Source: Chara braunii (taxonomy: Eukaryota > Plantae > Charophyceae). From it: a stretch of DNA of 60,402 nt. The stretch is taken from the NCBI GenBank assembly GCA_003427395.1, contig BFEA01000046.1, positions 1,773,465 through 1,833,866 on the forward strand. The letters run 5' to 3'. A program made the position numbers and the translations under genes. Position 1 is the first letter of the stretch. The number at the start of each line of letters is the position of its first letter. Below are positions 140 through 50,585 of this stretch, in pieces. Under the pieces are notes generated by a model. The model was not told where the DNA came from and made no database searches. It saw only the letters and a list, made by a program, of their open reading frames with translations.

Positions 140-179
<40 letters not shown>
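140..179. repeat. (CT)n microsatellite, left target site of the Penelope-like element
   Basis: Pure CT run that merges directly into the 5'-truncated element copy (ctctcggggctttggc vs internal ctctctgggctttggc at 5700). Confidence 0.95.
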
Positions 180-181
<2 letters not shown>

Positions 182-1513
182 GGCTTTGGCAAGATTTGCC
201 ACATTGTCCGGGAGTCAGTGGAGAGCTCCGCTCTCTAATCTGTACCCCGGACTGGGTCGGTTTCTGAGTTTTGAATAGGTGAGACAGTAGATATGCCCGT
301 CATACCTGGACGGGTTCGTTTCTCTATTCGTTTCCTTTATTTCGTTTTCTTTCTTCGTCCCTTTTCTTTTTTCTTTTTTCTTTTTTCCTTTTTCTTTTTC
401 CTTTATCTTTTTATTTTCTTTTTTCTTTTTTTTTTTTTCTTTTTTTCTTTTTTCGTTTTATTTTCGTTTCCCTTTAATTTAGCATGTACTTTAGCTCGGC
501 TCTCCGGCCCTACGTATTTCTCTCTTTTCTTCTCTTATTTTCCTCTTCCTTTTCGGTTTTTCCCCTTTTTTCATTTTTTCATTTTTCTCTCTTTTCCTCC
601 TTTTTCATTTCCCTTCCATTAGTACGGACGTTTGTGACCCCTGTTTGCCCATATAAACGCAGGACGGTTCAACCACAAAAAAGAGGGGACCTGGTACCGT
701 CTCCGGGAGAGCATGGGTAACCGTGTACCGTTTATCGGACTTGTAGAAGAGGCGGATGAGCAAACCGACCGGGAAGTTGATATTGATCGAAGGTAAGCGC
801 AGATTCTGCGTTTTTGGCTTGCTTTTTTTGGTAACAGGAGACACGACTCTGCCGAAGTGCGCTAACTTCGCGCCTCTGCAGACGATGCGAGAAATCAGGT
901 TCCAATTTGGCAAAGAAGAGGAAGGGGATGGCGATGAGGGAAGAGAGAAAAATGGGAGAGGAAGGAGCAGAGACCGGGTATGGAGGGAGGGGTAGGGACA
1001 GAGACGAACAAGGGAAGAATGGTTAGTGTGTGCGCCAGAGTGTTTTGGACGAGGAACTGGTTAGGCGGATAGTGAAGAAGGTAGCCGAGGTAGGATAGGT
1101 AGGCAGAGCTTCTCACTGATAACCTCGGGTTTTCGAGACTAAGATCCAGACTGAAGAATAGTATTTAAAGATGAGAGGGAGAGAAGGATCTATCTCTCCG
1201 CTGCATGATAGATGCANACCTCGGGTTTTCGAGACTAAGATCCAGACTGAAGAATAGTATTTAAAGATGAGAGGGAGAGAAGGATCTATCTCTCCGCTGC
1301 ATGATAGATGCAGGTTCCTAGCCCCCTGATGAGACTGTTGAGACACGCCGACAACGAAACTCGTCGGGGCAGTGCATGCCAGAAGGAGTGAGTTTTTTCG
1401 AGTTGAACATGATGAGTATGAGCGGAGTTTTCTGACTCGTGTTTGTACTAAGGTGTGCTATGGACTATGGGTGCAAGCAAGTTGATTTGTGCACTCTATC
1501 TTAACACTCCTCT
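170..1513 (+). repeat. Upstream pseudo-LTR (5'-truncated tandem copy of the element 3' end)
   Basis: Aligns by eye with 5695-7035; starts inside the RT C-terminal coding sequence and ends at ...tatcttaacactcctct; no TG..CA LTR termini. Confidence 0.92.
1321..1370 (+). ncRNA. Type I hammerhead ribozyme (copy 1, partly decayed)
   Basis: GCCCC-CTGATGA-G-ACTGTTG(agacacgc)CGACAAC-GAAAC-TC-GTC-GGGGC. Stem I GCCCC/GGGGC, conserved core, GUC cleavage triplet ending at 1365. Confidence 0.85.
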
Positions 1514-1840
1514 TTCTTGAATCTCCTATAGCGTGGTAACCGGCGTATTGGATACGTGATCGGTGGCTATGGAGGGTACTCGGAAGTTGTACTCGGAAGG
1601 TTTACGATCCATCACCAACGAAGTTTTTGCGACTTCAAGAGATTATCGACCGGCTTCGTTCTTTTCGGCGTTCGGCCCGAAGTGGTCGGGTCGGCTTGCA
1701 CGTGCGATGCACGGGACTAAGTCGACGACGAGCCCAGGTGGCAAGGTAGGAACGAACCATGAAGTAGACGATGAGCGGGGTCACTGTTGAGCATCCAGAT
1801 GAGATACGCTGACAACGGCGTGATTGTCCGTAGTACTGGG

Positions 1841-2002
1841 ATGAAAGCATTCTGGAAGGTCTTGAGAAAGGTCGGATATATCACGATCGGGTGTGTGGGT
1901 AGTTACTTGGTGATTCAAGGCGTAAAAGGTAGGATTAAGGGAACTCGTTGGATACTTAGTGTGCACATCTATGTTACGACGGTAGATTTGAGAAGCTACT
2001 AG
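1841..2002 (+). CDS. Small basic/hydrophobic ORF inside the PLE (53 aa, MKAFWKVLRKVGYITIGCVGSYLVIQG...)
   Basis: ATG lies 7 nt after a TAG and its stop is 11 nt before the next ATG; hydrophobic stretch; no recognised homology. Confidence 0.4.
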   Translation: MKAFWKVLRKVGYITIGCVGSYLVIQGVKGRIKGTRWILSVHIYVTTVDLRSY

Positions 2003-2013
2003 CCTAAGGAGGG

Positions 2014-2250
2014 ATGTCTACGAGAAACTTTAGGGATTTAGAATTCGAGAGACAGTTTTTAGAGTTTCAAAAGATTATTGAAGAAACGTTAGTACCGTCC
2101 TTTTTTGTAGCATTGCACTTCCAGGATTCTGATTCGAGGGAGGAAGTCATTGATCTTTTCGAAGTCGTACTAGGGCGCTTGCATAGTGTGGGTTGTTTGG
2201 TTAGGGATAGAAGGTTAAGAAGGAGGAGGCAGGGAAGGAGGAGGCGATAG
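2014..2250 (+). CDS. Small ORF inside the PLE (78 aa, helical, Arg-rich C-terminus)
   Basis: Clean ATG..TAG ORF with protein-like composition, packed between neighbours (gaps 11 nt and 3 nt). Confidence 0.55.
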   Translation: MSTRNFRDLEFERQFLEFQKIIEETLVPSFFVALHFQDSDSREEVIDLFEVVLGRLHSVGCLVRDRRLRRRRQGRRRR

Positions 2251-2253
2251 GAA

Positions 2254-3156
2254 ATGGCAGGACAACAGCAACAATTTGGGGGACCTCCCTTGACGTACGC
2301 TAGCGGCGCTCAGCAAACCATAGCGGGAGGAGGTCAGCATAGCGCAGTTATGTGCTACATATGCGGTAAACAAGGGCACTACGCGAGGAACTGCTGGGCT
2401 GCCGGCAACGGGCGACCAACGCAGCAGTTCCAACAACAATCCATCCAACAGCCGGTGGATGATGAGACTGCGAAGATGAAAGCATACTTCAGGAAAAAGA
2501 TTCAGAAGCAGAAGGTTGAAGAAGAAAGGAGAGAAAGGATAGAGGAGGGAAAGCGGAGGGAGGAAGAGGATAGGAGAGAAGCAGATAGGCTTAGGGAAGC
2601 GGAGGCAAGGGAAGCGAAGTTAGAAGCGAAGCTGATCAGATTGATGAATCAGCATAATAAATCGGTAAGTGCGGCACGATCTTCAGTGGTGAAGAAGAAG
2701 TCCCCGCGGACTAAAGCATGGATGCTGAGGGAGATGAGGAGCTATTTTGACGAATCCGAAGACGACAGCGAGGAGGTAAGAGAGGAAGCCGAACGATTGG
2801 TTAACGCTATAGAGAATCGGAAAGGCAAGAGGAGGATGAACGAAGTAGAAGGCAGAGTCTCTGCGGCCAGAATGAGGTCAACCAGGAATGCTCCGATTGA
2901 CGTGGATGATCTACCAGACGAGGAGAAAACACCTGTACGGAAGAGAGGTGAAGCTACCGGAGGAGACTTCCTTGAGTTAGCCCTAGAAATGCATGAGAAG
3001 CTTTCTGCGAAGAAAGTTACAGAACTGAGGAAAATCTGCAATGAAGAAGGTGTCGAATGGACCAGAAAGGAGGTTGCTATGAATGAGCTTGTGAGGTGTA
3101 GGACGTGCCTGGCCTACGGAGAGGGAATGAGGACATCGTCTCTATCCGGGAGGTAG
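2254..3156 (+). CDS. PLE accessory gag-like protein: CCHC zinc knuckle, coiled coil, C-terminal SAP-like motif
   Basis: Intact 300 aa ORF; CYICGKQGHYARNC = CX2CX4HX4C; E/R/K-rich helix; LSAKKVTELRKICNEEGV..KEVAMNEL resembles a SAP/HeH motif. Confidence 0.8.
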   Translation: MAGQQQQFGGPPLTYASGAQQTIAGGGQHSAVMCYICGKQGHYARNCWAAGNGRPTQQFQQQSIQQPVDDETAKMKAYFRKKIQKQKVEEERRERIEEGKRREEEDRREADRLREAEAREAKLEAKLIRLMNQHNKSVSAARSSVVKKKSPRTKAWMLREMRSYFDESEDDSEEVREEAERLVNAIENRKGKRRMNEVEGRVSAARMRSTRNAPIDVDDLPDEEKTPVRKRGEATGGDFLELALEMHEKLSAKKVTELRKICNEEGVEWTRKEVAMNELVRCRTCLAYGEGMRTSSLSGR

Positions 3157-3167
3157 AGATTTCCGGA

Positions 3168-5803
3168 ATGGAGGAACTCGAGGAATTCGCTAGGCTGATG
3201 GCTGATGAGGATAGAGGCAGAGGCCCACATCAGAATGCTTTGAACGATGCATATGAAGATTGGTTAGCCAGGCAGTTCTTACTAGCCGTGATTAGAGGGT
3301 GCTGCCCATGGGCAAGGAAGTGGGTTGGAGTGTGCACATTGGATATAGAGGATTTGTCGACCCGAGATTCCGGAGTGTGTGTTTTGGTTAGCCCCTGGTG
3401 TAGACATTTTTATATTGGATGTACTACTCGGAGCTTTCTTTTGAGGTGGTCGGAGCACGTCAAGTTTGCTGTTTCAGGGAAGCTTGGAAACTCTCCCAAG
3501 CTACATTCATGGCTGAAGCTATTTGGGTGGAAGAGATACTTAATTATGCCGCTCGTATCAAGGGCTGGTGAACCAACATCTGTGGAGAAAGCGTTGATTA
3601 GAGGAAAGGACGGAGGGAAAGAGGTAAGCGAAAAGCATATGAATGGCAGGGAAAGGTAATTTTATTCAACGGGGCGGCTTCGCTGATAAACCTGTTCAGA
3701 CAGCAACCGAAACCGCGACTTATTGTTTCGAATGGAGGATTGATTTGGGCCGACAAGTGGAGGAATATCAAGGGAAAAGTAGGTGAGTGCATCGTACGGG
3801 TTAATGGGAGGAATAGACTCTTCAGGGACTGCAGAAGAGAGTTGGAAGATGAAGGAAGATTTAAGGTCGTTAGGGTCAGGATAGTATCCTCCAATGTCGA
3901 ACGACGGAAGAATGTACCCAAGGATCTACTGAATCAGCCATAGGATAATGAGAGCAGTAAGGAAGGTGTTCGGAGCGGAGATACGGAGGCGACCGATTGT
4001 CAAGATTCCCTTTTCGACAAAGATAGACAGGAGGAGAGTGAGGGAGGTCGTAGCGTTGACAATAGGGCAGGTCATTACTGATCCGCCAATGAGAAGGTAT
4101 GTAGCTCAGCGAATTCGGGTCGTTTTTAAGAAAAGCTTGACAGTGGGACAAATAGTACACAGTCAGAGGCTATGTGCCGGAGCTGACAAGGTTTTTTGCA
4201 CATGCTCGGATTTGCCATGGCCCAGGGCACAAGGACATATCAAGGCGAGACTGGACGAACTTCCTGCAGTTCCGGACTTTGTCAAAAACTCGCGGGACGT
4301 CACGAGTGGGGAAGAAGTTACCCTTCGAGTACTGAGGAAGAGCATTACGGATGCAGTAAGTCCGTGGAGTAAGCGGAAGCAGATTCTACAGCAGGATCAG
4401 GTGCTGCAGAACTGCTACACTCACCAGCCATGGAGACAATGTCGTGCGATGGGAGGGAATCAGGTAAGGGAATGGGCGCAAACACTGGTGGGCTTGGTAG
4501 CGGTTGCGATTGATCGGAACCCGGGGGGCACCTTAGTTCTGTGTCCAGTTCTATACCTACATGCGTGTAAAATGACGTTTAACTGGAACGATAGCTTCGT
4601 ACTGGAACCTAGGACCGAGGTACATATCATCGAAGATATGAAGAGAAGTTATGACCGTGCCGGTCTGGGGAGGATAGCGATGTGGGGAAAAGGAGGAAGG
4701 ATTGGACAGGCCTATGTGTTACCAAAGGACAAAGATATTGGAAGGTGGAGACTGATATCCCCCTCAAGCAACGATCCAGCTAGATTGACAGGGTCAAGAT
4801 TAGGAAGGGCGCTGCGATTCCAGAGCGGTGGATATGCTGAGGGAGAAGTGCGGAGAATTCGAGAGAGATCTTTCAGAATGTGAATTCGCGTATGCCAGGA
4901 GCTACGACGTAAAGGATATGTTTGCTAGGCTGTCTCATGATGCGGTGTTGAACTCTGTTCTATGGATGATTGAATTGTATCGAAGGAGGAATCTGGTAGG
5001 GGTTAGGGCAAGTCGGAGAGGAAGGGTATGCATGATGGCGAGGAACCGAAGGAGTGAAGATTTTGTGCTGTTAGACTTCGAACTCATGACAAGAGCCATA
5101 CAGTTTGAGCTGAACAATGCTTTCGTTACAAGCGCCGGTGAGACGCTGAGGCAGGTCTTCAGAATCCCGGTGGAGGAGCTCCAGCCCCGCGCTCGCATGT
5201 TTGGTATGTGCTAGATCGGAGGCAATTTTTGTGGAGTCCCTTGGATGAGACAGGAGATGGGTCAGAGGGATGAGGATGATCGATGATGTCGCTATTATTG
5301 TTGGACTTCCGGATCGAGAGGAGGAGACAGAATGGACGACCACAGAGATTTTGGGGAAGTTCGAATCGTGCTATGATGAGACCCTCTGTCTGGTGAGAAA
5401 GGATGAAGGAGGGAACGCCATGGATTTCCTAGAAGCACGGGTTGTCGTTGAAGTAGCGCCAGTGCACATTCATGTCTTCCCGAGGACAAGGAATCAGCCG
5501 TCATTAACCGAGACCGGTCGGGCACGGATCCACTCAATGCAAGACTTTGATTCATTCTCCAAAAAAGCGACGAAGAGAGCTACATTGGTTGCTAGCATGA
5601 TACGCGCTCACAGGCTCTCGACATCGGATGAAGCAACGCTGACAACCATTTCGGCGATAATGTTTGAAGCACGCCTTCGGGGGTACCCAACGGAGGTCTC
5701 TCTCTGGGCTTTGGCAAGATTTGCCAAATTGTCCGGGAGTCAGTGGAGAGCTCCGCTCTCTAATCTGTACCCCGGACTGGGTCGGTTTCTGAGTTTTGAA
5801 TAG
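3168..5803 (+). pseudogene. GIY-YIG endonuclease-reverse transcriptase polyprotein of the PLE, disrupted by frameshifts, stops and deletions
   Basis: SGVCVLVSPWCRHFYIGCTTRSFLLRWSEH (GIY-YIG); CTC linker motif; YVLPKDKD..WRLIS (RT 1-2); SYDVKDMFARL (motif A); RQVF.IP then frameshifted SSSPALACL (motif B); RMIDDV (motif C); MDFLE (motif E). Confidence 0.9.
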
Positions 5804-7028
5804 GCGAGACAGTAGATATGCCCGTCATACCTGGACGGGTTCGTTTCTCTACTCGTTTCCTTTATTCCGTTCTCTTTCTTCCTCACTTTTCTTTTATCTT
5901 TTATCTTTTTTCCTTTTCCTTTTTCCTTTATCCTTTTATTTTCTTTTCTCTTTTTTCTTTTTTCTTTTTCCTTTTATTTTCGTTTCCCTTTAATTTAGCA
6001 TGTACTTTAGCTCGGCTCTTCGGCCCTACGTATTTCTCTCTTTTCTTCTCGTATTTTCCTCTTCCTTTTCGGGTTTTCCCCTTTTTTCATTTTTTCATTT
6101 TTCTCTCTTTTCCTCCTTTTTCATTTCCCTTCCATTAGTACGGACGTTTGTGACCCCTGTTTGTCCATATAAACGCAGGACGGTTCGACCACAAAAAAGA
6201 GGGGACCAGGTGCCGTCTTCGGGAGAGCATGGGTAACCGTGTACCGTTTATCGGACTTGTAGAAGAGGCGGATGAGCAGACCGACCGGGAAGTTGATATT
6301 GATCAAAGGTAAGCTCAGATTCCGCGTTTTTGGCTTGCTTTCTTTGGTAACAGGAGACACGACTCTGCCGAAGAGCGCTAACTTCGCGCCTCTGCAGACG
6401 ACCCGAGAAATCAGGTTACAATTTGGCAAAGAAGAGGAAGGGGATGGCGATGAGGGAAGAGAGAAAAATGGGAGAGGAAGGAGCAGAGACCGGGTATGGA
6501 GGGAGAGGTAGGGACAGAGACGAACAAGGGAAGAATGGTAAGTGAGTGCACCAGAGTGTTTTGGACAAGGAACTGGTTAGGCGGGTAGTGAAGAAGGTAG
6601 CCGGGGTAGGATAGGTAGGCAGAGCTTCTCACTGATAACCTCGGGTTTTCGAGACTAAGATCCAGACTGAAGAATAGTATTTAAAGATGAGAGGGAGAGA
6701 AGGATCTATCTCTCCGCTGCATGATAGATGCANACCTCGGGTTTTCGAGACTAAGATCCAGACTGAAGAATAGTATTTAAAGATGAGAGGGAGAGAAGGA
6801 TCTATCTCTCCGCTGCATGATAGATGCATTCCTGGTTTCCTAGCCCCCTGATGAGACTGTTGAGACACGCCGACAGTGAAACGCGTCGGGGCAGTGCGTG
6901 CCAGAAGGAGTGAGTTCTTTTGAGTTGAACATGATGAGTATGAGCGAAGTTTTCTGACTCGTGTTTGTTCTAAGGTGTGCTATGGACTATGGGTGCAAGC
7001 GAGTTGATTTGTGCACTCTATCTTAACA

Positions 7029-7035
<7 letters not shown>
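5695..7035 (+). repeat. Downstream pseudo-LTR / element 3' end
   Basis: Second copy of 170-1513 with scattered substitutions; runs into (CT)n at ~7032. Confidence 0.92.
6843..6892 (+). ncRNA. Type I minimal hammerhead ribozyme (copy 2)
   Basis: GCCCC-CTGATGA-G-ACTGTTG(agacacgc)CGACAGT-GAAAC-GC-GTC-GGGGC. Stem II ACTGTTG/CGACAGT, palindromic minimal stem III ACGCGT, predicted cleavage after 6887. Confidence 0.9.
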
Positions 7036-7109
<74 letters not shown>

Positions 7110-11829: not shown

Positions 11830-14800
11830 AGGTCCTCCGATAATACTTTAGTCCAAGGTAGGACCTTTCCCTTGGAGCTCTGTCCGTGTAAACCAGGGTT
11901 CGTCTTCTAGTTCTTGAAAAAAGAATCTGACTCTCTCGTAGGCTCGAACTATATCGGAGCGGTCTCTAGAAGCTCTGTCCGTGTAAACCAGGGTTCGTCT
12001 TCTAGTTCTTGGAAAAAGAATCTGACTTTATACTTGTTTTTGTGGACGACCTTTACCTCCTGTTCTGGACACATCCTCATCAACTACACGATCAATTTCG
12101 TGCCTTCCGTCCATGTCTGGAGGAATCATCGACCTTCTCGACGGAAACTGCTGACTTGTCCTGCAAGGTAACAACTTCAATGCGTGAAAAACTGGATATG
12201 TATGGAGGTGTGCTGGAATCTCAATTGTGTAGGATGGTCCATCCTCTCCGTCCTTGACTTCTAGGACTGGCCACGGTCCTCAATATGCAGGCAATAGCTT
12301 CTGCGATATGTTCTCCGCAGGAGCAAACTCTTTAGACTTGATCCAGACTAAGTCGCCTACTTGGAACTGTGATGGGCGACTGTGTTTGTTAGCTTGCTCG
12401 ATCATCCTGTGTTAGGCCTTCCTGAGGTTCTTCGTGACGGTAGCAATCTCTTTCTCATACTGTAGTGCAAACTCCCTAGTACCAGGCGGTAGCCTAAATC
12501 TGATCCCGGCTCAGTCCATCAAATGTTCTACGTGGTCTAAAGGACTTATGCAACTCATTGGGAGTGAGACAGGTTGCTAAGTGCACGCTGTTGTTGTATG
12601 CGGTGGCTACCTTGGGAAGCATCTCATCCAGTTGACTTGATTGGTTCTAATATACATTCTGAGAACTTGCTGCAGGATTTTGTTCATCTGGTCAGTCTAT
12701 CCGTTAGTCTCTTGATGAAGGCCAAACGACATCAACAACTTAAGAGTCATAAACTCTCATCAGCCCCTGCCAGTTCTGACTAGTGAACCTGGTATCTCTG
12801 TCACTAACTATCGACAGTGGGAGACCATGTTCACTGACCCAATGATCAAAGAAACTAAATTTGTACGTGCCTCTGCGGGCATAGGAACAAACATTGCATA
12901 CGTACTAAATTTGTCAACCATAACCATGACTTGGCTCTTGCCATGCGTACTCCCGACCCCAATATCCATAAAGTCAATAGACACAGAATCTCCGGGTCCT
13001 GCGGGAATAGGCAGTGGTATGAGAAGACCAAGAGGGGCTCGCGTAGTGGTTTTATTCCGTTGGCACACCTAGCAACTGCGTAGATACTCTATGCAAGTCG
13101 GCCTTCATACGAGGCCGCGTATACCCGTGAATAAGGTTAGCTAACGTCTTCTACCAACCAAAATGTCCCTATGTGTCATGGCATTCCCCTAAGATCAGAC
13201 TACAGATCTGTTCAGTGTTGGGAACGCATAAACGATCGGCTACACTAGTCTTCCCAAATAACAACCCGTCTGAAGTGCGGTAATCTGGTTCGGTCTCTAG
13301 AGCCTCTTTAACTCTTTTGAGGAGATCGCTACAGATAGGGTCCTGCGCATACGCTTCCTTGACTTTCTGTTGCAGGTCTCTCCCCATATCCAAATAGGGA
13401 ACTATAGCTCCAAAGTAATCAGTTTTCCTACTTAGAGCGTTCGCGACTACATTATACTTCCTTTTAATTGGCTTGAGCTCAAAGTCAAACTGGCCTATCT
13501 CTGCGGCCCAGCTCGTAAGCTTAGGTGTCATCTTGGCCTGCGTTTTAAACCAACTCAACGTCTCGAGGTCTGAATACACTTTAAAGTGTCTCCCAAGCAA
13601 GTAGTGCTTCCAGTGGTCTAGCGCATGCATGAGAGCGTGGAGTTCCTTTTCATAGGTGGATGTCGCTACCTTCTCTGAAGGCATTCTAGCAGACATGAAC
13701 TCTACGGGTCTATACCCATTACCACCATCTTGCTGTAAGACAAAACCTATACCATACTGACTCGCATCAGTGGTGACAACGAAAGGTGATGATAAATCGG
13801 CTCCCTTGAGGACTCGATACTCTATCAAAACCTGTTTAACTTCTTCAGGCCCGACGTACAATGTTTATCCCACTCCCAGTTGCGAAGGGGTGCGACGATA
13901 GTGGAAAGGTTTCTGACGAGATTTCTGTAGTAATTGGTCCTAGAAACGACCGCAACTCTATGAATGTGAGGGGCGTCAACCAATCTCTAATCACTGCTAT
14001 CTTACTGTCCTCAGGTTTGATGCCATCTTCATCTAAGACATAGCTCAAGTACAAAACTTGTGTCTTGGCCCACTTGCACTTCTTCGCGTTGATTTTGAAG
14101 TTAGTTTCTCTTAGCTTCTCCAAGATCTTCTTCAAATGGCCGTCATGCTCCTGGAGGGTCTCACTAAGAACTAGAATGTCATCTAGGTATACTACTACAA
14201 ACCTATCAAACATGACCTAAACAAATCGTTCATTCAGCGTTGAAACGTCTCTGGCGCCTTGGTTAGTCCAAAGGGCATCACTATAAACTCATAGTGCCCA
14301 TATCTGGTCTTAAATGTTGTCTTATACTGGACGTCCCGGTGGACCTCTATCTGATGATAACCAAACTTCAAATCTATCTTTCAGAAATACTTGCAACCCT
14401 GCACCCGATGTAACAGATCATCTATATGGGGCAGTGGTTCGACATTCTTCAGAGTGACGGCATTCAGACCCCTGTAGTCAATACACATTTTACCTAGGTT
14501 GTTGGATCGGACGTCCGGGACCCCCCTGACCGTTCGGGATGTCGGACCGAACAAGGGTTATTCAAACTAGCGCAAAAAAAAAAAAAAAAAAAAAACAACC
14601 GTTCTCAGAAAAATCTGAAAACAATATATGTTATGTAACATGACAATACAAGCAACATTTGCCTTGGAGTCATGTTCGAATTCGCAACCAATCATGAGTT
14701 AAAAATCGAAAACCGAAAAACAAATTTGTTTTTTTTACGAAAAATAAAACTTTTTTTCCCGGACGATAGGGGTACCGGACGTATGGGGGAGACGTCCGGG

Positions 14801-43818: not shown

Positions 43819-46800
43819 TCAGGACTGTTTCAACCACTCTGCTAACTGCATATTTCCTTCGGGACTGATCGAGGCCCCAAAGCCCTTGTGGGCCCAAGTC
43901 TTAGCGAACCACAAAAGGCCTTTGGACCGCCAATCAGAAATGATTGTGATTCGAAGCTCAGAGATAATTCTGTTCTGGATGTGCTTGAGGCAATGGTTAT
44001 CCCCTTTGAATAGTAGATCGTTCCTGCTCCACCAGATGGCTGACAGAATGATTCCTCTGCAGACATTGGCTATGTAGTTTGGGCCCTTTGTGATGGGTCC
44101 CATATTCTCCCATTTGCCTTGTAGGATGAATATGTCAGACCATTCCTCAGTTCGCATGCTCTGTTGTCTCCACCTCTCCCTCCACCATTCCCAGACTCTT
44201 GCGGAGAAAGGGCATTGGAGCCAAAGGTGAGAGTCCGATTCCCAGGCCCAGTTGCACCTGGTGCATTTGTCCGATATGTCCATTCCTTTGGACCTTAGCC
44301 ATACTGCCGAGGCTGTGACCTGTAGCGATTGGAGCCAGAGGATGGCTGGTGCTTTCTGTGAAGGAAGTTTCCTGATTGCTCTCCACAACTTGAACATGTC
44401 TGTCTCCTTGAGTTGCTGGCCATACTGGTTTTGGAGTCTCTTCCATGCTGTCAGAATCGGTTTTTTCTTTATCTTTGACCTCTGCATCCTGACTCGTACC
44501 CTTGGTTTGTAGCCTATGAGTGGCGTTGCACCTTTCTCCTTAATAGTATGGGGCGTCGAGACCGAGCCAGCCCAGCCAAACAGCAACGGATCTACGTTGA
44601 GTGATTCGGCGAGTGGTGGGAACAGTTTGCGAACTTGCTTTTTGTTGAGTTCTGATTCCCACACTCGAACTTCTTCCCAATCCTCAGATGCTAGGATTGA
44701 AGCTTCCTCACAAAATTTCAGACTTTTCTCCTTACTGAGCCCCCGTCGTATGGACCACTTTTGGGCTTTGGTCTCTTGGCTCGGGTCTGGGCTCTGGACT
44801 TTCCATATGATTCCCTGGTCCACTGGGTCTGCCAGCCAGGTACCTTGCGCCCATATGGACCCCGGGCGTAGTTTGGCTACCCAGTGGGGCGGGATGGCCT
44901 GTTTGACTTTGTCGAAGTTCAGTAGCACATTGTGTACTCTGGGAAGCCTGGCCCTGAGTTCTTGTTCAGCTATCCAATCACCTGCATCAGTGTCCCAGAC
45001 GTCCTTTATCTGGATGATCCGCTTTTCGATCCATGTTCTCCCGAAAGCACCCGGACTGGAGCCTGCACCCAGAGTAGAGCTCTTCTGGGTTTTTATCCAG
45101 GAGTTTTCGAATATCACTTGGTTCAAGATCTGGGTTTTTGAGATCGGTTCAGATATGGGACCTGGTCTGTTTTTATTCCAGGCTGCAAGAACATTCTTCC
45201 ACACTCTAGATTTGAGGTTTCTGTTGCAGAAGGACCCAATGAAAAAACAGAGCCAGACATGGGAGAGGGGTGGGAGAGGCCCCATTCCTCCATGAGGATG
45301 TATTCTGCAAAGGCTTTCCAGATTTTGATTTCCGGATCCGTCATGGGCAACGTAGGCCATTTAGCCAGTAGGGCGAGGTTTTGCTGAGCAGGGTCCAGGA
45401 TCCCCAGGCCTCCTTGGTCCCTTGGGAAACATACTGAATCCCAAGCCACTTTGCTGATGTATCCCTATGGGTCTGCGGCCGACGGTTTCCACAGGTACCT
45501 GGCCGCTATATACTTTATCCTGTGGTAGGCCTCATCACCTAACCTGTGAACTGTGAGCGGGAACCAGAGAATAGAGAAAGCCGCAGACGAGACCACCGGT
45601 GCCCTCCCAAAGAGGGACAGTTTAAAATTCCGAGCCCATCCCATAATTCTAGCGGTTACTTTCTCCACCAGAATAGCGTCCTGTGCCTCAGCGCAGTCTG
45701 TCAGTGCTATCTGAACCCCTAGGAACCTATCGGAGCTGTTTGATGGGATCTTCTTTAGGCCCCAGTCTACACAGATCACGAAGGGTTCCAGGAGGACGAA
45801 GACAGATTTCTCCCAATCGATTGAGGCTTCCGACAGGGAGCAATAATCATCCAGAACTTTTCTTAAGGCTCCAAGCGATGGGGTAGAGTTAGGGCATGCT
45901 ATTGTTAGATCATCCGCTAGTGCCCCCCCTTTCCAGTGAATTGAGTGCGGGATACTCAGGCCTCTAATTTCGTCATTTTTTCTAATGTTGTTTAGTAGGA
46001 CTTCCAGTTGAATGACGAAGAGAAGGGGGGCAAGGGGGCAACCTTGTCTCAGTGAGCGGGTGAGCGAAAATGAAGGGGAGGTTTGGCCATTCACCATTAC
46101 TACCGAAAAAACATTTGTGTACATGGCTTTGACCCATGTGCAAAACCCGGGGCCAAACCCCATCTTGGCCAAAGTGGTGAACATGAAAGCCCATCTTACT
46201 TTGTCGTAGGCTTTCTCCATGTCTAGTAGAACGATGGCCACGTCCAGATTTTTCTCTGCTAGGATTTCCAGGGCCTGCATAGCGGACAATATGTTGTCAA
46301 AAATTGTCAAAAATTGGGCGTCCTTTAATGAAGGCTCCTTGTTCCATCCCCACTGTGCTTGGAAGGACATCCGCTAGTCTAATGGCTAAGGCCTTCGCCA
46401 AAATTTTATACACCACATTTAGACTGAAATGGGCCTGTAGTTCCTCACTTCTTTCTCGTCTCCCTTTTTGTATAGGAGAGCGATGATTCCCTTGAGCCAC
46501 CCTTTAGGCAAGGATCTCGAACTAAGCGTGCTGTTGAATATCTGAGTAAGTAACGGGGCGAAAGCCTCCCAAGCACTAAGGAACAGTTCTACGGGTAGAC
46601 CATCGGCCCCTGGGCATTTACCTATGGCCATTTTCTTGGCAGCCTGGTGCAGTTCTACAGCTGAAAGTGGAGCATCCAGTCTATCCCTCGTGGAGTGAAT
46701 GATAGAGCCAGGGATGTCTACCCAAAAATCTGAAACCAAGCCGAGATCAGTTTCTGGTCTATCTTGTGGTCTCCTAGAGGAGACTATGTCCAAAAAGTAA

Positions 46801-48072
46801 TCCATAGCGTACTTGCACATGTCTTCCGTGTTTGACACTAGGGGTAGGTCTGGGTTGAAGGGGTGGGACAACTCACGTATTATAGGCTTGGTTTGGCGAA
46901 GGATGAGTAACCTAAAGGTGTCCTTGGTCATTTTATCATAGCCAACCAAGCCTCTGATCTTTAGCCATTGGAGCCAATCCTCTTGTTTTTTTATCTCTAT
47001 TGATTCTAGTAGGGTAACGCTCTCCATTCTTTTTTTTTACCAACAGAAATCAGAGAAAGGGTTTAACCCCATGTTACTTTCTGCTTCTTTTATAGCCCTG
47101 CGTGCACAGGTCTCCGCCCATGATCTGTTGGCGGCTTTCATCCTCGAGAAAACTTTTACCGCAACAGTTATTATTCCTATCCCTGTTTCCGCACACTTAT
47201 GTTCGTGGGGGAATAAGTCTTTAGCATTGGCCCATAATGTCATGTGGTTTTTGATCCAGGCCGGGATCCCTGGGTCCTTGAGAACATTGGTGTTCAATCT
47301 GAAGGGAGGACAAACTTTATCAAACTGTTCCTTTGCTAGAATTTCCATGCAGACCGGGTAGTGATTAGAAAGCGTTTGAAGGAGTATGTCACACCACGAA
47401 CATCTGTCCCAAGTGACACCTCTGGCTAGTATAAAGTTCAGCCTACGACTGGGCTGAATAGCAAAGGGAGCCGGTTTGGGACCGTACCATGTGTGGCCCG
47501 GGATTTTTGGGTTTAGGATTCTGAAAACATCCACGAGGCATTGGGCCTCCATAAATGCTGATAATATCCGGGCGTCCTGACGAATGAGAGTCGGCTGGGG
47601 TGAGTCTAGGCCTGGGTTGAGTGTAGTGTTCCAATCGCCCGCAATGATGAGGTTTTCTACATCTGGGAGGGCAGTCGGCAGGGAAGCGAAGAAATTAATT
47701 CTTTCAGCATACTCCACTGGGGCATAAACTGACATCACAGCCCAGTCTTCGTGCCCCACAGCCAGCTTCACCCAGATCCACCTACCATTGGGGTCTTTGT
47801 ATGTGTCCAAAACATCCACTTCTAGGTCCTTACGGAGTAGTATGGCCACCTCCCCTTTAGTGCCTTCGGCCGGGGCCCAGAACTGTGGGCCTGTCCACCA
47901 AGCCAATCGGTTAGATATTTTCCCTTAGTTTTGTTTCTTGAACACAAACAATATGTGGATTATCCTTACTAACCCATTATCTGAATCTGGGACGCTTAGT
48001 CAGGTTGGAGGTATCCCCCAACCCTCTTAGATTCCAGGATACCACTTTAATCTTGTTTGGCAGGACCATCAT
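43819..48072 (-). pseudogene. LINE ORF2 (AP endonuclease, RT, C-terminal zinc finger) with frameshifts
   Basis: KVVSWNLRGL, VCVQETK, SVYAP, IAGDWN, LSNHYP (APE); KCPGADG, NYRPIS, LDMEKAYD, RQGCPLAPLLF, LADDL, RFLG (RT); QGGLGI; CTRC..ESDSHLWLQC (zf-RVT). Confidence 0.93.
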
Positions 48073-50585
48073 TATGGTCACTGCCGCTATGATCTTGGAT
48101 GTGGACTGGCTCCACAGAGACATGCTGGATATCCCATGTCAGGAGGTGGCTCGAGAGCTGATCGGCGTCTAGCGATTCTTGGATTTTAGAGTGGGCTATC
48201 CAGTCAGCGATGTGGCTTGCCGGGATGTCAGATTCAATTTTGGCCACAGCAAGTGCTGTGGAGGATGCCGCTAGAAGGGGGGACAGACCAGTCCATTGCA
48301 ACTGGTAAGTATTTTCCGTGCCTGTCTGTCCCGACCAGTCGCTCAGTTTCAAGATGGCTATATGCAGCAGTATCGTTGAGTTGGGACTGTCTGCTACTGT
48401 GTGTCGACCCATCTTGAAATGTGGGAAGCCCTCCGTTTTGCCTGCCGATTTCAGGATCTGGGTGTCAGTCAGGTCTACCGCTAGGGAATCTGTCGGTTGA
48501 GCCTGGACAAATATAGAAGGTATGATCATCGACTCTTCCTTCCCTTGTGCTGTGAGGAAGCCAATACTTGAGTCACTATTGCACACAATGAGTGGGACCA
48601 GAAACTGAGCGATACCTTTTTTATCCTTGCGAGATAGGGTTCTTATTGGCTTGGCGAAACTTAGAGCTTTTTTTGTCTGCTTCTGTTGCGAGGTGCCTTT
48701 CCTCCGGACCTCAATTCTCGCCACATCCCTGCCCTCCTGCTGTGACAAGTGGCGAGGGATGGCAGAGGTATCATTTGCTTTCATTTTTTTCCGAGGGCCA
48801 GGAAACTCAGACATGGGGAATAAGAAATCCTTATTTCCCTTCGTCTGTTTCCCTATTTTTTCCTGTCTTTTCTTTCTTTTAGCCGCACCCCTCTGGTTTG
48901 TAGCCTTGGCTTTGAAAACGAGGTTGCTTCTTTCTCCACCCCCTCCCATCTCCTCTGCCTGATTTTCAGCCACTTCCACCTTTTCCTCCACTGTGTCCAC
49001 TTCATCAGCGGGGGAGGGAAGCACTAGCTTATCAGGCAAGATGTCATTGGGACCCGGGGGACGGAGGAAGATCCGTGGCCAGGTCCCGGGGGGGGAGGAA
49101 GATCCGTGGCAGACACTCATCGGGCGTATTCCCCAACTGCTCTTTCGACTCTACATGAGATGTTCTTGGGAGGGAAGAGGAGGGCTGGGGGGAAGGCTGG
49201 AGTGGAGAAGGAACAGGCGCAGGGAAAGGGGAAGAAGAGGATATGTTCATGTCCATAGTTCCTTTGCTCCCCTGAGTGGAATCCATGTTGTCCCCCTGTC
49301 CAATCTCCTTGTCTACCACCACCCCTGCTTCACCCCCTGTGCTCCTCGGGCCCTTCCATTCCTTTGTCTTTGAGGAATCCACAGTCGAGGTTTGTATCTC
49401 CTCTATATGCTCCTTGCCCTTGCTTATCTGTTTTTTGGCACGCCAGGAGAGAGGTTTCCTTTCTTTCTCTTTTCTGGGGCGACGGATTTTTAATTTTGTT
49501 CCCAGCTCGCCTGGGGTTGCGACAGATCCGTCTTTCGGATTAGGGGATGGGCCTATCAGGTGATCTGTGGGATCTTCCTTCCCATTGCTGTCTTCCACCT
49601 CCGGTCTATCCCTGTGCTTTGCCTTGTCCTTGGGGACAATGTTCTCTTTCATTTTCGTTGCCTCTCGTCCCTCCGTATTGGTTTTGGGAAAGGCATCCTT
49701 GTTCCCTGACGAGTCTTCTGTTACAGCCTCCTTGAAGGACTTTCTACGTGCATTTGTCCGCATATTGATGGGGCAGCTTTCGTCCTCGTCAGAGTGAAAA
49801 TATCGTCGACATTTTTTGCACCAAAGAGAGTCAGAGCATGCAATGTTGAGATCTACCCAACCGTCTTGCTCCAGATCTATTATCAAGTGCTGCTTATACC
49901 ACACGCGCGCAGCTAATTCCATGTCAAATCGAACATTCCAAAGATCTGGGGAGATTGGGTCCACAAAAGCCTCGTGAGCTTTTATGATTTTGCCAAAGGC
50001 TTTTTGAATAGCCCCTCTCAGGTGAGGTAATATAGAGATTGGCACCTGTATTGCTTTCACCCAAAAGTAGCGGAACTTTTGTGCTTCATTCCATTCAAAA
50101 ATCTCATTCTCATTCATCCATCTGAGGAATCTAACTGAGTAGTTTTTCCCATCCAATTCTATTTTGTCCGAGCCTTTCTTGATCATCCACGACGCTATTT
50201 CCTTGGCACTGGTTACGTAAGTGACCAGGTTTTTCCCATCACACCTGAAGACTCCACGTCTGGGAGCAGCGTTCAAGTGTGAATCTTGAGCCCAGCCATC
50301 TTCGTAGATTCGAATAATCCTGTTTTTGATTGATGGTGGGAGTGATGTTGAATCGTTCTCGAAGTGGACCGAAACGGCATGCTCTGCCAGCCATTCGGCT
50401 TGGATGTCATAGAATTCCTTGTGGACAACCACTCTTGCATATTCTTGACCACTATCAGCTATCCTGGGTGCGAATTCCTCAGGAAGGATACCATTAGCAT
50501 TGCAGTCAATGACTCCTCTGATCCTCATTTTTTCTGCTTCTGTCATGGCAGGCGAGCTAGCCATGGTGATGGTAAGGACCGACAC
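48047..50585 (-). pseudogene. LINE ORF1, probably one ~840 aa ORF split by a frameshift near 49050-49120
   Basis: 513 aa and 357 aa overlapping ORFs; FWVKAIQVP (ORF1-type W.....P motif) and CKKCRRYFH.....SC knuckle; the junction has a G-run and a short direct repeat ggaagatccgtggc. Confidence 0.75.

What the first reader, a model, noticed from the sequence alone, without database searches (positions are those of the whole stretch)
1560..5803. Apparently polycistronic Penelope-like element: chain of stop-start-coupled ORFs before the EN-RT gene
Seen: all ORFs are on one strand and tightly packed. TAG1767-3nt-ATG1771 (mini ORF with one internal TGA, possibly CpG decay of CGA); TAG1833-7nt-ATG1841 (53 aa); TAG2002-11nt-ATG2014 (78 aa); TAG2250-3nt-ATG2254 (300 aa); TAG3156-11nt-ATG3168 (GIY-YIG-RT). 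Known: classical PLEs encode one RT/EN ORF. Inference: five consecutive 3-11 nt gaps suggest termination-reinitiation translation of a virus-like multi-gene cassette, possibly from a ribozyme-cleaved (uncapped or circular) RNA. This is my best candidate for an undescribed system in the window.
Basis: partly seen in the sequence, partly recalled or inferred. Interest (0 to 1): 0.85.

Follow-up and report, generated by a model that had tools for sequence, protein, structure and literature searches.

The report
Four-gene Penelope-like retrotransposon in Chara
A known family of jumping genes in the stonewort alga Chara braunii turns out to carry two overlooked, conserved small proteins ahead of its two known genes, all four packed nose to tail like a virus genome and probably made from one RNA.

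Summary
The window holds one decayed copy of a Chara braunii Chlamys-type Penelope-like element (172-7039; 1.35-kb pLTRs, hammerhead ribozyme), matching the published Chlamys-2_cBra type (CCHC ORF1 + GIY-YIG/RT). All five reported gaps exist, but only the last three are conserved. Twelve paralogous copies show four cistrons: ORF-A (~50 aa, hydrophobic; omega 0.27), ORF-B (78 aa, helical hairpin with Arg-rich tail; omega 0.06), ORF1 and pol. I found no description of A or B and no homologue outside C. braunii. The 1771-1833 mini-ORF and TAG1767 are not conserved; that stretch holds a covarying RNA hairpin. Stop-start spacing is tight at B/ORF1 (10 of 11 copies within 15 nt, all three stop codons, shifting phase). 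A divergent subfamily has TAATG/TGATG at ORF1/pol. AUG is the most depleted triplet inside ORF-B, so ribosomes probably also scan through it. Best model: one RNA, leaky or resumed scanning plus reinitiation for A, B and ORF1, and stop-start reinitiation for pol. A conserved splice-donor-like site at the ORF1 stop keeps spliced RNAs as a live rival. No RNA data could be tested.

The parts
172..1517 (+). 5' pseudo-LTR (3' end of RT ORF + 3'UTR), joined to a (CT)n tract
   Evidence: 95.2% identical to 5697-7039. Starts at the same CT-rich RT codons in window, L002, L003, L006, L009.
1258..1264 (+). TATA-like box about 60 nt upstream of the ribozyme, probable promoter (a second copy at 1162 lies in a 96-nt duplication with an N, probably an assembly artefact)
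   Evidence: TATA-like motif at a similar position in L001-L004, L006, L007. Promoter role inferred from Penelope/Chlamys-3.
1321..1370 (+). Type I hammerhead ribozyme, 5' copy; predicted cut after 1365; the palindromic helix III has one change in this copy
   Evidence: Core conserved in 10 copies, covarying stems. Not detected by Rfam.
1533..1570 (+). Conserved stem (TGGTAACC paired with GGTGGCTA) at the start of the unique region, just past where new copies end
   Evidence: 16 invariant columns in 9 copies. 9-bp consensus stem, only 2 pairs covary.
1771..1833 (+).
   Evidence: Stops after 13 codons; no homologue or equivalent junction in other copies.
1815..1831 (+). Conserved RNA hairpin: variable stem, two-pair closure, UGAN tetraloop, 3' bulged U; 13-45 nt upstream of ORF-A; up to 3 copies per leader
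   Evidence: 13 instances; 9 of 10 pairs with double changes; covariation 0.58 vs 0.25, 0/500 shuffles. Stems of 4 bp or more in leader vs elsewhere, p=6e-4.
1841..2002 (+). ORF-A, 53 aa: basic N-terminus, one hydrophobic segment, short C-terminal alternating-hydrophobic motif; fast evolving
   Evidence: Present in 10 of 11 main-subfamily copies. Omega 0.27, p=7e-4. Leave-one-out HMM ranks the window ORF first, E=3e-5. Hydropathy.
2014..2250 (+). ORF-B, 78 aa: helical hairpin with Arg-rich tail; internally AUG-depleted
   Evidence: Open with a conserved ATG in 11 of 11 main-subfamily copies. Omega 0.061. AF2 pLDDT 87. AUG 9 observed vs 35.5 expected, rank 1 of 64.
2254..3156 (+). ORF1, 300 aa: Gag-like CCHC knuckle, long coiled coil, weak SAP-like C-terminus
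   Evidence: 22 C. braunii homologues. zf-CCHC in 16 of 18, SAP weak in 2 of 18. Omega 0.041. Model.
3150..3158 (+). Splice-donor-like site overlapping the ORF1 stop (weak in this copy)
   Evidence: Stronger than every ORF1 window in 6 of 10 copies. Also present in L012.
3168..5803 (+). pol: N-terminal GIY-YIG endonuclease, CxC linker, RT; broken by frameshifts near 3600-3650, 3935, 4820 and 5180 and by stops
   Evidence: tblastn of P0026/P0028 gives five collinear pieces. Motifs. Source names GIY-YIG and RT.
5697..7039 (+). 3' pseudo-LTR, ending in (CT)n
6843..6892 (+). Hammerhead ribozyme, 3' copy (intact ACGCGT helix III); predicted cut after 6887

Best explanation
This is a Chlamys-2_cBra-type Penelope-like retrotransposon with four protein genes on one transcript: A (small membrane-associated peptide), B (helical hairpin with an Arg-rich RNA-binding or nuclear-targeting tail), ORF1 (CCHC RNA chaperone) and pol (EN-RT). 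SHOWN: all four are conserved coding ORFs with their own ATG, A to ORF1 with measured purifying selection; junction phase varies, so they are not fused; B avoids AUG; the B stop stays beside the ORF1 start. INFERRED: transcription starts in the 5' pLTR below a TATA-like box. Ribosomes enter near the 5' end (capped, or at the hammerhead-cut end). They reach A, B and ORF1 by a mix of leaky scanning and reinitiation after the short ORFs, and the AUG-free ORF-B lets 40S subunits that skip or finish A run on to the strong ORF1 start. Pol cannot be reached by scanning (about 20 AUGs per ORF1), so it is made at low level by termination-reinitiation at the ORF1 stop, as in SART1. This would give much ORF1, some A and B, and little pol. 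The UGAN hairpin is the likely binding site of B or ORF1 (feedback or packaging); this is not tested.
For: Coding. Gaps: A/B +11,+15,+13,+55,-20,+6,+3,+10,-29,+49; B/ORF1 +3,+3,read-through,+2,+1,-8,+4,+1,-11,-11,+2 with TAG, TGA and TAA all used; ORF1/pol +11,+8,+24,+9,+13,+10,+11,+28,+36,+2,+10. Divergent copies L009 and L011 overlap stop and start as TAATG and TGATG, the arrangement of SART1 and viral reinitiation sites (PMC10275272). AUG depletion in B: out-of-frame 6 vs 16.8 with amino acids held fixed (P=0.002); NAT codons avoided before G (p=0.003); none of this in ORF1. This is the signature used for leaky scanning in green algal bicistrons (PMC11291117). The divergent subfamily has a different conserved 114-aa basic ORF, ending 7 nt before ORF1 in L011, so the packing outlived the gene.
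Against: No RNA or ribosome data. Leaders hold 0-7 AUGs and ORF-A 0-6, only mildly depleted, which should reduce flow from a 5' cap. No TURBS-like UGGGA or other shared motif lies upstream of any restart. A/B gaps (-29 to +55) and some ORF1/pol gaps (28, 36) exceed the ~20-30 nt window of TURBS systems. A donor-like site at the ORF1 stop suggests splicing. Copies share ancestry, so P values are optimistic, although third positions are near saturation (0.37-0.38 identity).
Confidence: 0.5

Rival explanations
1. Same four genes, but separate RNAs: splicing or internal starts give ORF1 and/or pol their own mRNA (as in copia Gag or foamy-virus Pol, from my own knowledge). For example, the donor at the ORF1 stop could remove pol and join a U-rich acceptor in the 3'UTR. 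Tight packing would then reflect compaction only.
For: Donor-like AG|GTRAG at or beside the ORF1 stop, best in ORF1 in 6 of 10 copies and in L012. Pyrimidine tract plus AG in the 3'UTR of several copies and before the TGGTAACC stem. Penelope and Chlamys-3_cRei have 5'UTR introns and an alternative isoform.
Against: No acceptor signal before the B or ORF1 ATG (purine-rich). No conserved 5'UTR donor. The donor is absent in L009/L011, which have TAATG/TGATG. Arg/Lys-stop codons mimic a donor. The donor matrix was approximate and taken from memory. Splicing does not explain AUG avoidance in B.
Confidence: 0.25
2. Pure relay: every downstream ORF is made only by ribosomes that have just terminated on the previous one.
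For: B/ORF1 within 15 nt in 10 of 11 copies. TAATG/TGATG at ORF1/pol. The 114-aa ORF of the divergent subfamily has six internal AUGs yet ends 7 nt before ORF1.
Against: It does not predict AUG depletion in B. A/B gaps are loose. The first two junctions are not conserved. No TURBS. Serial efficiencies of 3-20% would leave the Gag-like ORF1 scarce.
Confidence: 0.15
3. The ORFs are joined into polyproteins by frameshifting or read-through.
For: In the window, B and ORF1 are in the same frame across TAG-GAA-ATG. L002 ORF-B reads past the junction.
Against: Phase at every junction takes all three values across copies. Each ORF keeps its own ATG and N-terminal motif.
Confidence: 0.03
4. The small ORFs are not genes, only open frames in a G-rich, structured 5'UTR.
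For: ORF-A is only about 20% identical between distant copies, is not recognisable in L007, and ranks poorly in 3 of 10 leave-one-out tests.
Against: B: omega 0.061, LRT 331; frame-blind alignment 100% in phase, with codon-position identity 0.57/0.72/0.38. A: omega 0.27 in frame vs 0.67 and 2.1 in shifted frames with stops. Chance of such an ORF per copy is 4-13%, yet seen in 8 of 10.
Confidence: 0.05

Closest known systems
Chlamys-2_cBra (Craig et al. 2021, PMC8557442)
   Same: C. braunii; N-terminal GIY-YIG, CxC linker, DK motif, RT; upstream zf-CCHC ORF; canonical 3' hammerhead; pLTRs; microsatellite insertion.
   Different: The paper's text names only the CCHC ORF and EN-RT. It does not mention ORF-A, ORF-B, the junction spacing, AUG depletion or the UGAN hairpin.
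SART1 non-LTR retrotransposon (UAAUG coupling; reviewed in PMC10275272)
   Same: Gag-like ORF1 stop beside or overlapping the pol start; TAATG/TGATG in L009/L011.
   Different: A different class of element with two ORFs. Here the main subfamily has gaps of 2-36 nt and two further upstream genes.
MDG1-group LTR retrotransposon sORF1/sORF2 and nackednavirus smORF1/smORF2 (PMC11952523)
   Same: Two small ORFs upstream of the gag/core gene on the unspliced RNA; one helical, one hydrophobic.
   Different: Order reversed. ORF-A is shorter (47-62 aa), has no MG myristoylation start and is basic on the N-terminal side. No sequence link was found, and the host has walled cells.
Green algal bicistronic genes translated by leaky scanning (PMC11291117)
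   Same: Short upstream ORF with AUG depletion before the downstream ORF.
   Different: Host genes, mostly two ORFs, not selected for stop-start adjacency.
Terminons (Athena-RT giant elements of bdelloid rotifers; PMC5537684)
   Same: PLE relatives with several co-oriented extra ORFs.
   Different: Telomeric, up to 40 kb, endonuclease optional and separate. This element is 5.5 kb and compact.

Membership tests
Chlamys PLE, Chlamys-2_cBra type | GIY-YIG endonuclease N-terminal to RT, with conserved R, H, E, N | tested here: met
   Motifs visible in alignments. Source names 'GIY-YIG domain-containing'. Pfam GIY_YIG_2 only weak, E=0.04.
Chlamys PLE, Chlamys-2_cBra type | CxC motif between EN and RT; DK motif | tested here: met
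   CTC in the window, CxC in L002/L006. PKDKD upstream of WR(P/L)IS.
Chlamys PLE, Chlamys-2_cBra type | RT core motifs | tested here: met
   Motifs A (SYDxKDMF), B (GIPMG..SP) and C (MIDD) in homologues and window pieces. No Pfam RVT hit.
Chlamys PLE, Chlamys-2_cBra type | Upstream ORF with zf-CCHC | tested here: met
Chlamys PLE, Chlamys-2_cBra type | Canonical hammerhead near the 3' end, pLTRs, microsatellite target | tested here: met
Chlamys PLE, Chlamys-2_cBra type | RT phylogeny inside Naiad/Chlamys, IFD present, identity to the published consensus | not testable with these tools
   No reference PLE sequences at hand; supplement not held.
TURBS-type termination-reinitiation | Stop and start within about 20-30 nt | tested here: met
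   B/ORF1 10 of 11; ORF1/pol all but one (36 nt) within 30 nt; A/B 8 of 10 within 30 nt.
TURBS-type termination-reinitiation | Conserved UGGGA complementary to 18S rRNA upstream of the restart | tested here: not met
   At most 2 of 10 copies, at inconsistent positions.
Leaky-scanning polycistron | AUG depletion upstream of the downstream ORF | tested here: met
   Strong in B, mild in A and leader, absent in ORF1.
Leaky-scanning polycistron | Weak start context upstream, strong downstream | tested here: inconclusive
   ORF1 mostly purine at -3 with GC at +4/+5; B has a purine at -3 but no G at +4; A variable. No Chara consensus available.
sORF2/FAST fusogen | Single hydrophobic segment | tested here: met
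   15-residue Kyte-Doolittle maximum 1.8-2.7 in all 10; the window copy is among the weakest.
sORF2/FAST fusogen | N-myristoylation motif, N-out ectodomain, polybasic patch after the membrane segment | tested here: not met
   No MG start; net charge +2 to +4 before the segment and +1 to +4 after.
Ribosomal protein uL11-like (for ORF-B) | Significant sequence or fold match | tested here: not met
   E 0.27-1.2 over residues 29-64. The model is a two-helix hairpin with no significant fold hit.

The most novel reading that the evidence does not exclude
A telomerase-related retroelement has evolved a virus-like accessory module: a membrane peptide (A) and an Arg-rich RNA-binding protein (B) that recognises the UGAN hairpin. 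They would be translated from a hammerhead-cut, possibly circular, unit-length RNA and would move the ORF1-coated RNP between cells of the alga, analogous to plant-virus movement gene pairs or insect sORF1/sORF2.
Probability: 0.12. Interest if true: 0.9.

Novelty: new variant of a known kind. Interest (0 to 1): 0.62.

Why it matters
Endonuclease-bearing PLEs are treated as one-ORF elements, with this Chara type as a two-ORF exception. Here it has four cistrons, two encoding proteins with no detectable homologue, plus a conserved RNA hairpin. That gives a compact nuclear RNA on which three downstream starts can be dissected with simple reporters in a streptophyte. It also repeats, in a third unrelated reverse-transcribing lineage, the layout of two small ORFs ahead of the Gag/core gene seen in MDG1 elements and nackednaviruses. 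The pairing of hammerheads with a structured leader also makes testable what PLE ribozymes are for (translation, circularisation, or neither).

Tried and rejected
Homologues of ORF-B: word search empty. HMMER over 1.8 billion representatives gave one real hit, a mis-spliced C. braunii gene model; two repeat-protein hits were judged spurious on inspection. Pfam, PDB sequence, PDB fold, viral fold and IMG/VR searches were negative. The uL11 resemblance was rejected as non-significant. ORF-A: no Pfam family. Other species: pol profile hits only C. braunii; JGI metagenomes negative; exact ORFs not in the protein collection, so no transcript contigs were found. Rfam found nothing real, including the hammerheads. 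A GUG start in the hairpin loop was rejected: in frame with ORF-A in only 3 of 7 copies. A palindromic kissing loop was rejected: the fourth loop base varies. TURBS was not found. The 114-aa ORF of the divergent subfamily is not detectably homologous to ORF-B. The ORF-A omega from ten distant copies (0.11) was not relied on because the alignment is weak; the L003/L012 pair was used instead. ORFs with internal stops (L001 and L003 ORF-A) were read with X or from the next codon. Nothing fetched looked human.
Full report
Identity. The 300-aa ORF at 2254-3156 is identical over 95% of its length to Chara braunii CBR_g40530, and has 21 further homologues, all C. braunii. The element spans 172-7039, with direct repeats at 172-1517 and 5697-7039 (95.2% identical), embedded in (CT)n. 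No second copy lies in the window. The gene from 3168 to 5803 is broken into five collinear pieces. It carries an N-terminal GIY-YIG domain with R/H/E/N residues, a CxC linker, the DK motif and RT motifs A-C. Each repeat holds a type I hammerhead with covarying stems and a palindromic helix III, the form thought to cleave as a dimer (PMC4209133). This is the anatomy that Craig et al. give for Chlamys-2_cBra: a canonical 3' hammerhead and an upstream zf-CCHC ORF (PMC8557442). The family and ORF1 are therefore known. The paper's text mentions no further ORFs, and its supplement was not available.

The observation. All five gaps are as reported. I fetched 12 paralogous loci, whose ORF1 proteins are mostly 39-60% identical to the window's. 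Ten belong with the window (L001-L008, L010, L012) and two (L009, L011) form a divergent subfamily. ORF-B (2014-2250) is open from a conserved ATG in all 11 main-subfamily copies. Its omega is 0.061 against 0.041 for ORF1. A frame-blind DNA alignment stays 100% in phase, with codon-position identities 0.57/0.72/0.38. B and ORF1 divergences correlate (rho 0.69), so they travel together. ORF-A (1841-2002) evolves fast, about 20% identity between distant copies. A 47-62-aa ORF with a basic start and a hydrophobic core is nevertheless present in 10 of 11 copies (one internal stop each in L001 and L003; not recognisable in L007). The alignable pair L003/L012 gives omega 0.27 (p=7e-4), while shifted frames give 0.67 and 2.1 with 4-6 stops. 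A leave-one-out profile ranks the window ORF first among 1245 segments (E=3e-5). In contrast, the mini-ORF and the junctions at 1767/1771 and 1833/1841 have no counterpart elsewhere. The chain has four genes, not six.

The proteins. ORF-B models as an antiparallel two-helix hairpin (pLDDT 87) ending in an Arg-rich tail. No significant sequence or fold relative was found outside this family. ORF1 has a CCHC knuckle, a 74-residue helix and a weak SAP-like C-terminus. ORF-A has one hydrophobic segment with positive charge on its N-terminal side and no myristoylation start. That fits a signal anchor or signal peptide better than a FAST fusogen. The divergent subfamily has instead a 114-aa basic ORF, conserved between L009 and L011 (46-55% identity, codon-position identities 0.56/0.71/0.32), which ends 7 nt before ORF1 in L011. 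It is not detectably related to B.

The junctions. B/ORF1 gaps are +3, +3, +2, +1, -8, +4, +1, -11, -11, +2 and one read-through, using all three stop codons. Ten of 11 lie within 15 nt, against 3.5 expected (P=6e-6). This null cannot separate coupling from compaction. ORF1/pol gaps are +2 to +36 in the main subfamily, and exact overlaps TAATG and TGATG in L009 and L011. These overlaps are the stop-start form of SART1 and of viral reinitiation (PMC10275272). A/B gaps are looser, -29 to +55. Phases take all three values at each junction, which excludes a fixed frameshift or read-through. No TURBS motif is shared.

Scanning signature. AUG is the most under-represented of 64 triplets inside ORF-B: 9 against 35.5 expected, and five of ten copies have none. 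Out-of-frame AUGs are 6 against 16.8 with the protein held fixed. NAT codons are favoured 67:20 before non-G bases but 5:9 before G (p=0.003). ORF1 shows none of this and carries about 20 AUGs per copy. Pure stop-start relay does not need this depletion; scanning through B does. It is the criterion used for leaky scanning in green algal bicistrons (PMC11291117). The best reading is therefore mixed: scanning and short-ORF reinitiation feed A, B and ORF1, and long-ORF reinitiation feeds pol. These steps are inferred, not shown.

The splicing rival. A donor-like site overlaps or abuts the ORF1 stop and is the best donor in ORF1 in 6 of 10 copies, plus L012. U-rich acceptor-like tracts lie in the 3'UTR. 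The matrix was approximate, and Arg/Lys-stop codons imitate donors. Related PLEs do splice, so separate RNAs remain possible.

RNA elements. Thirteen instances give 9 of 10 pairs with double changes and 0/500 shuffles reaching the score. In this copy an alternative fold is predicted, and the loop-closing changes could be CpG decay. A second conserved stem at 1533-1570 marks the start of the unique region. A TATA-like box precedes the hammerhead, so a transcript would begin just above the 5' ribozyme and could be cut to a 5.5-kb unit. New copies end about 150 nt beyond the cut site, and their 5' repeat starts at one fixed CT-rich spot in RT. A circular or multimeric template would explain this (proposed in PMC4209133). 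Self-cleavage can promote cap-independent translation in plant cells (PMC13725137). Against this, cleavage was not needed for insertion by an anole PLE in vitro (PMC11167929). The cleaved-RNA idea stays open.

Verdict. Real, and new as a variant of a known family: two conserved, homologue-free small genes, a conserved hairpin and a four-cistron layout in a PLE. The nearest functional analogies are MDG1 sORF1/2 and nackednavirus smORF1/2 (PMC11952523), but ORF-A fails the FAST hallmarks tested. Limits: one species, 13 copies chosen through annotated proteins, decayed copies, and no expression data.

Noticed in passing
window 172 and 5697; L002 4283, L003 4045, L006 3877, L009 5272: The 5' pLTR begins at the same CT-rich codons in the RT C-terminus in every copy where it could be mapped, matching the target repeat ((CT)n, or (CTT)n in L009/L011). 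5' ends look programmed by microhomology, not randomly truncated.
   Followed up: partly
window 1518-1570; L002 5356, L003 5397, L006 5310, L010 5120: The 3' ends of insertions map 3-16 nt upstream of the conserved TGGTAACC stem, which may position reverse-transcription start.
   Followed up: partly
L011 5637-5981; L009 5659-6000: A divergent subfamily carries a different conserved 114-aa, very basic ORF (27 K+R) just before ORF1, and TGATG/TAATG overlaps at ORF1/pol. L009 has a pLTR of about 0.2 kb alignable and no hammerhead was found by my pattern.
   Followed up: partly
window 1122-1313 and 6638-6829: A 96-nt exact duplication separated by a single N in both pLTRs; probably an assembly artefact.
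   Followed up: no
window 2254-6511 (CBR_g40530); also CBR_g24273, CBR_g49420, CBR_g3004: Public C. braunii gene models are chimeras spliced across these elements; one fuses ORF-B into a host-like xylanase-inhibitor-domain gene model.
   Followed up: partly
L008 4350-5500; L007 4950-5700; L006 5320-5590: Leaders range from 97 to 1179 nt. The long ones are pyrimidine-rich repeats or carry up to three copies of the UGAN hairpin.
   Followed up: partly
window 43819-50585, minus strand: Fragmented L1-like non-LTR retrotransposon (ORF1, APE-like and RT pieces), judged by eye from the translations.
   Followed up: no
window 13169-13861, minus strand: Ty3/gypsy-like RNase H/integrase fragment, judged by eye.
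   Followed up: no
ORF-B residues 45-64 (window about 2146-2205): Non-significant resemblance to the C-terminal helix of eukaryotic ribosomal protein uL11 (E 0.27-1.2); not supported by the fold search.
   Followed up: yes
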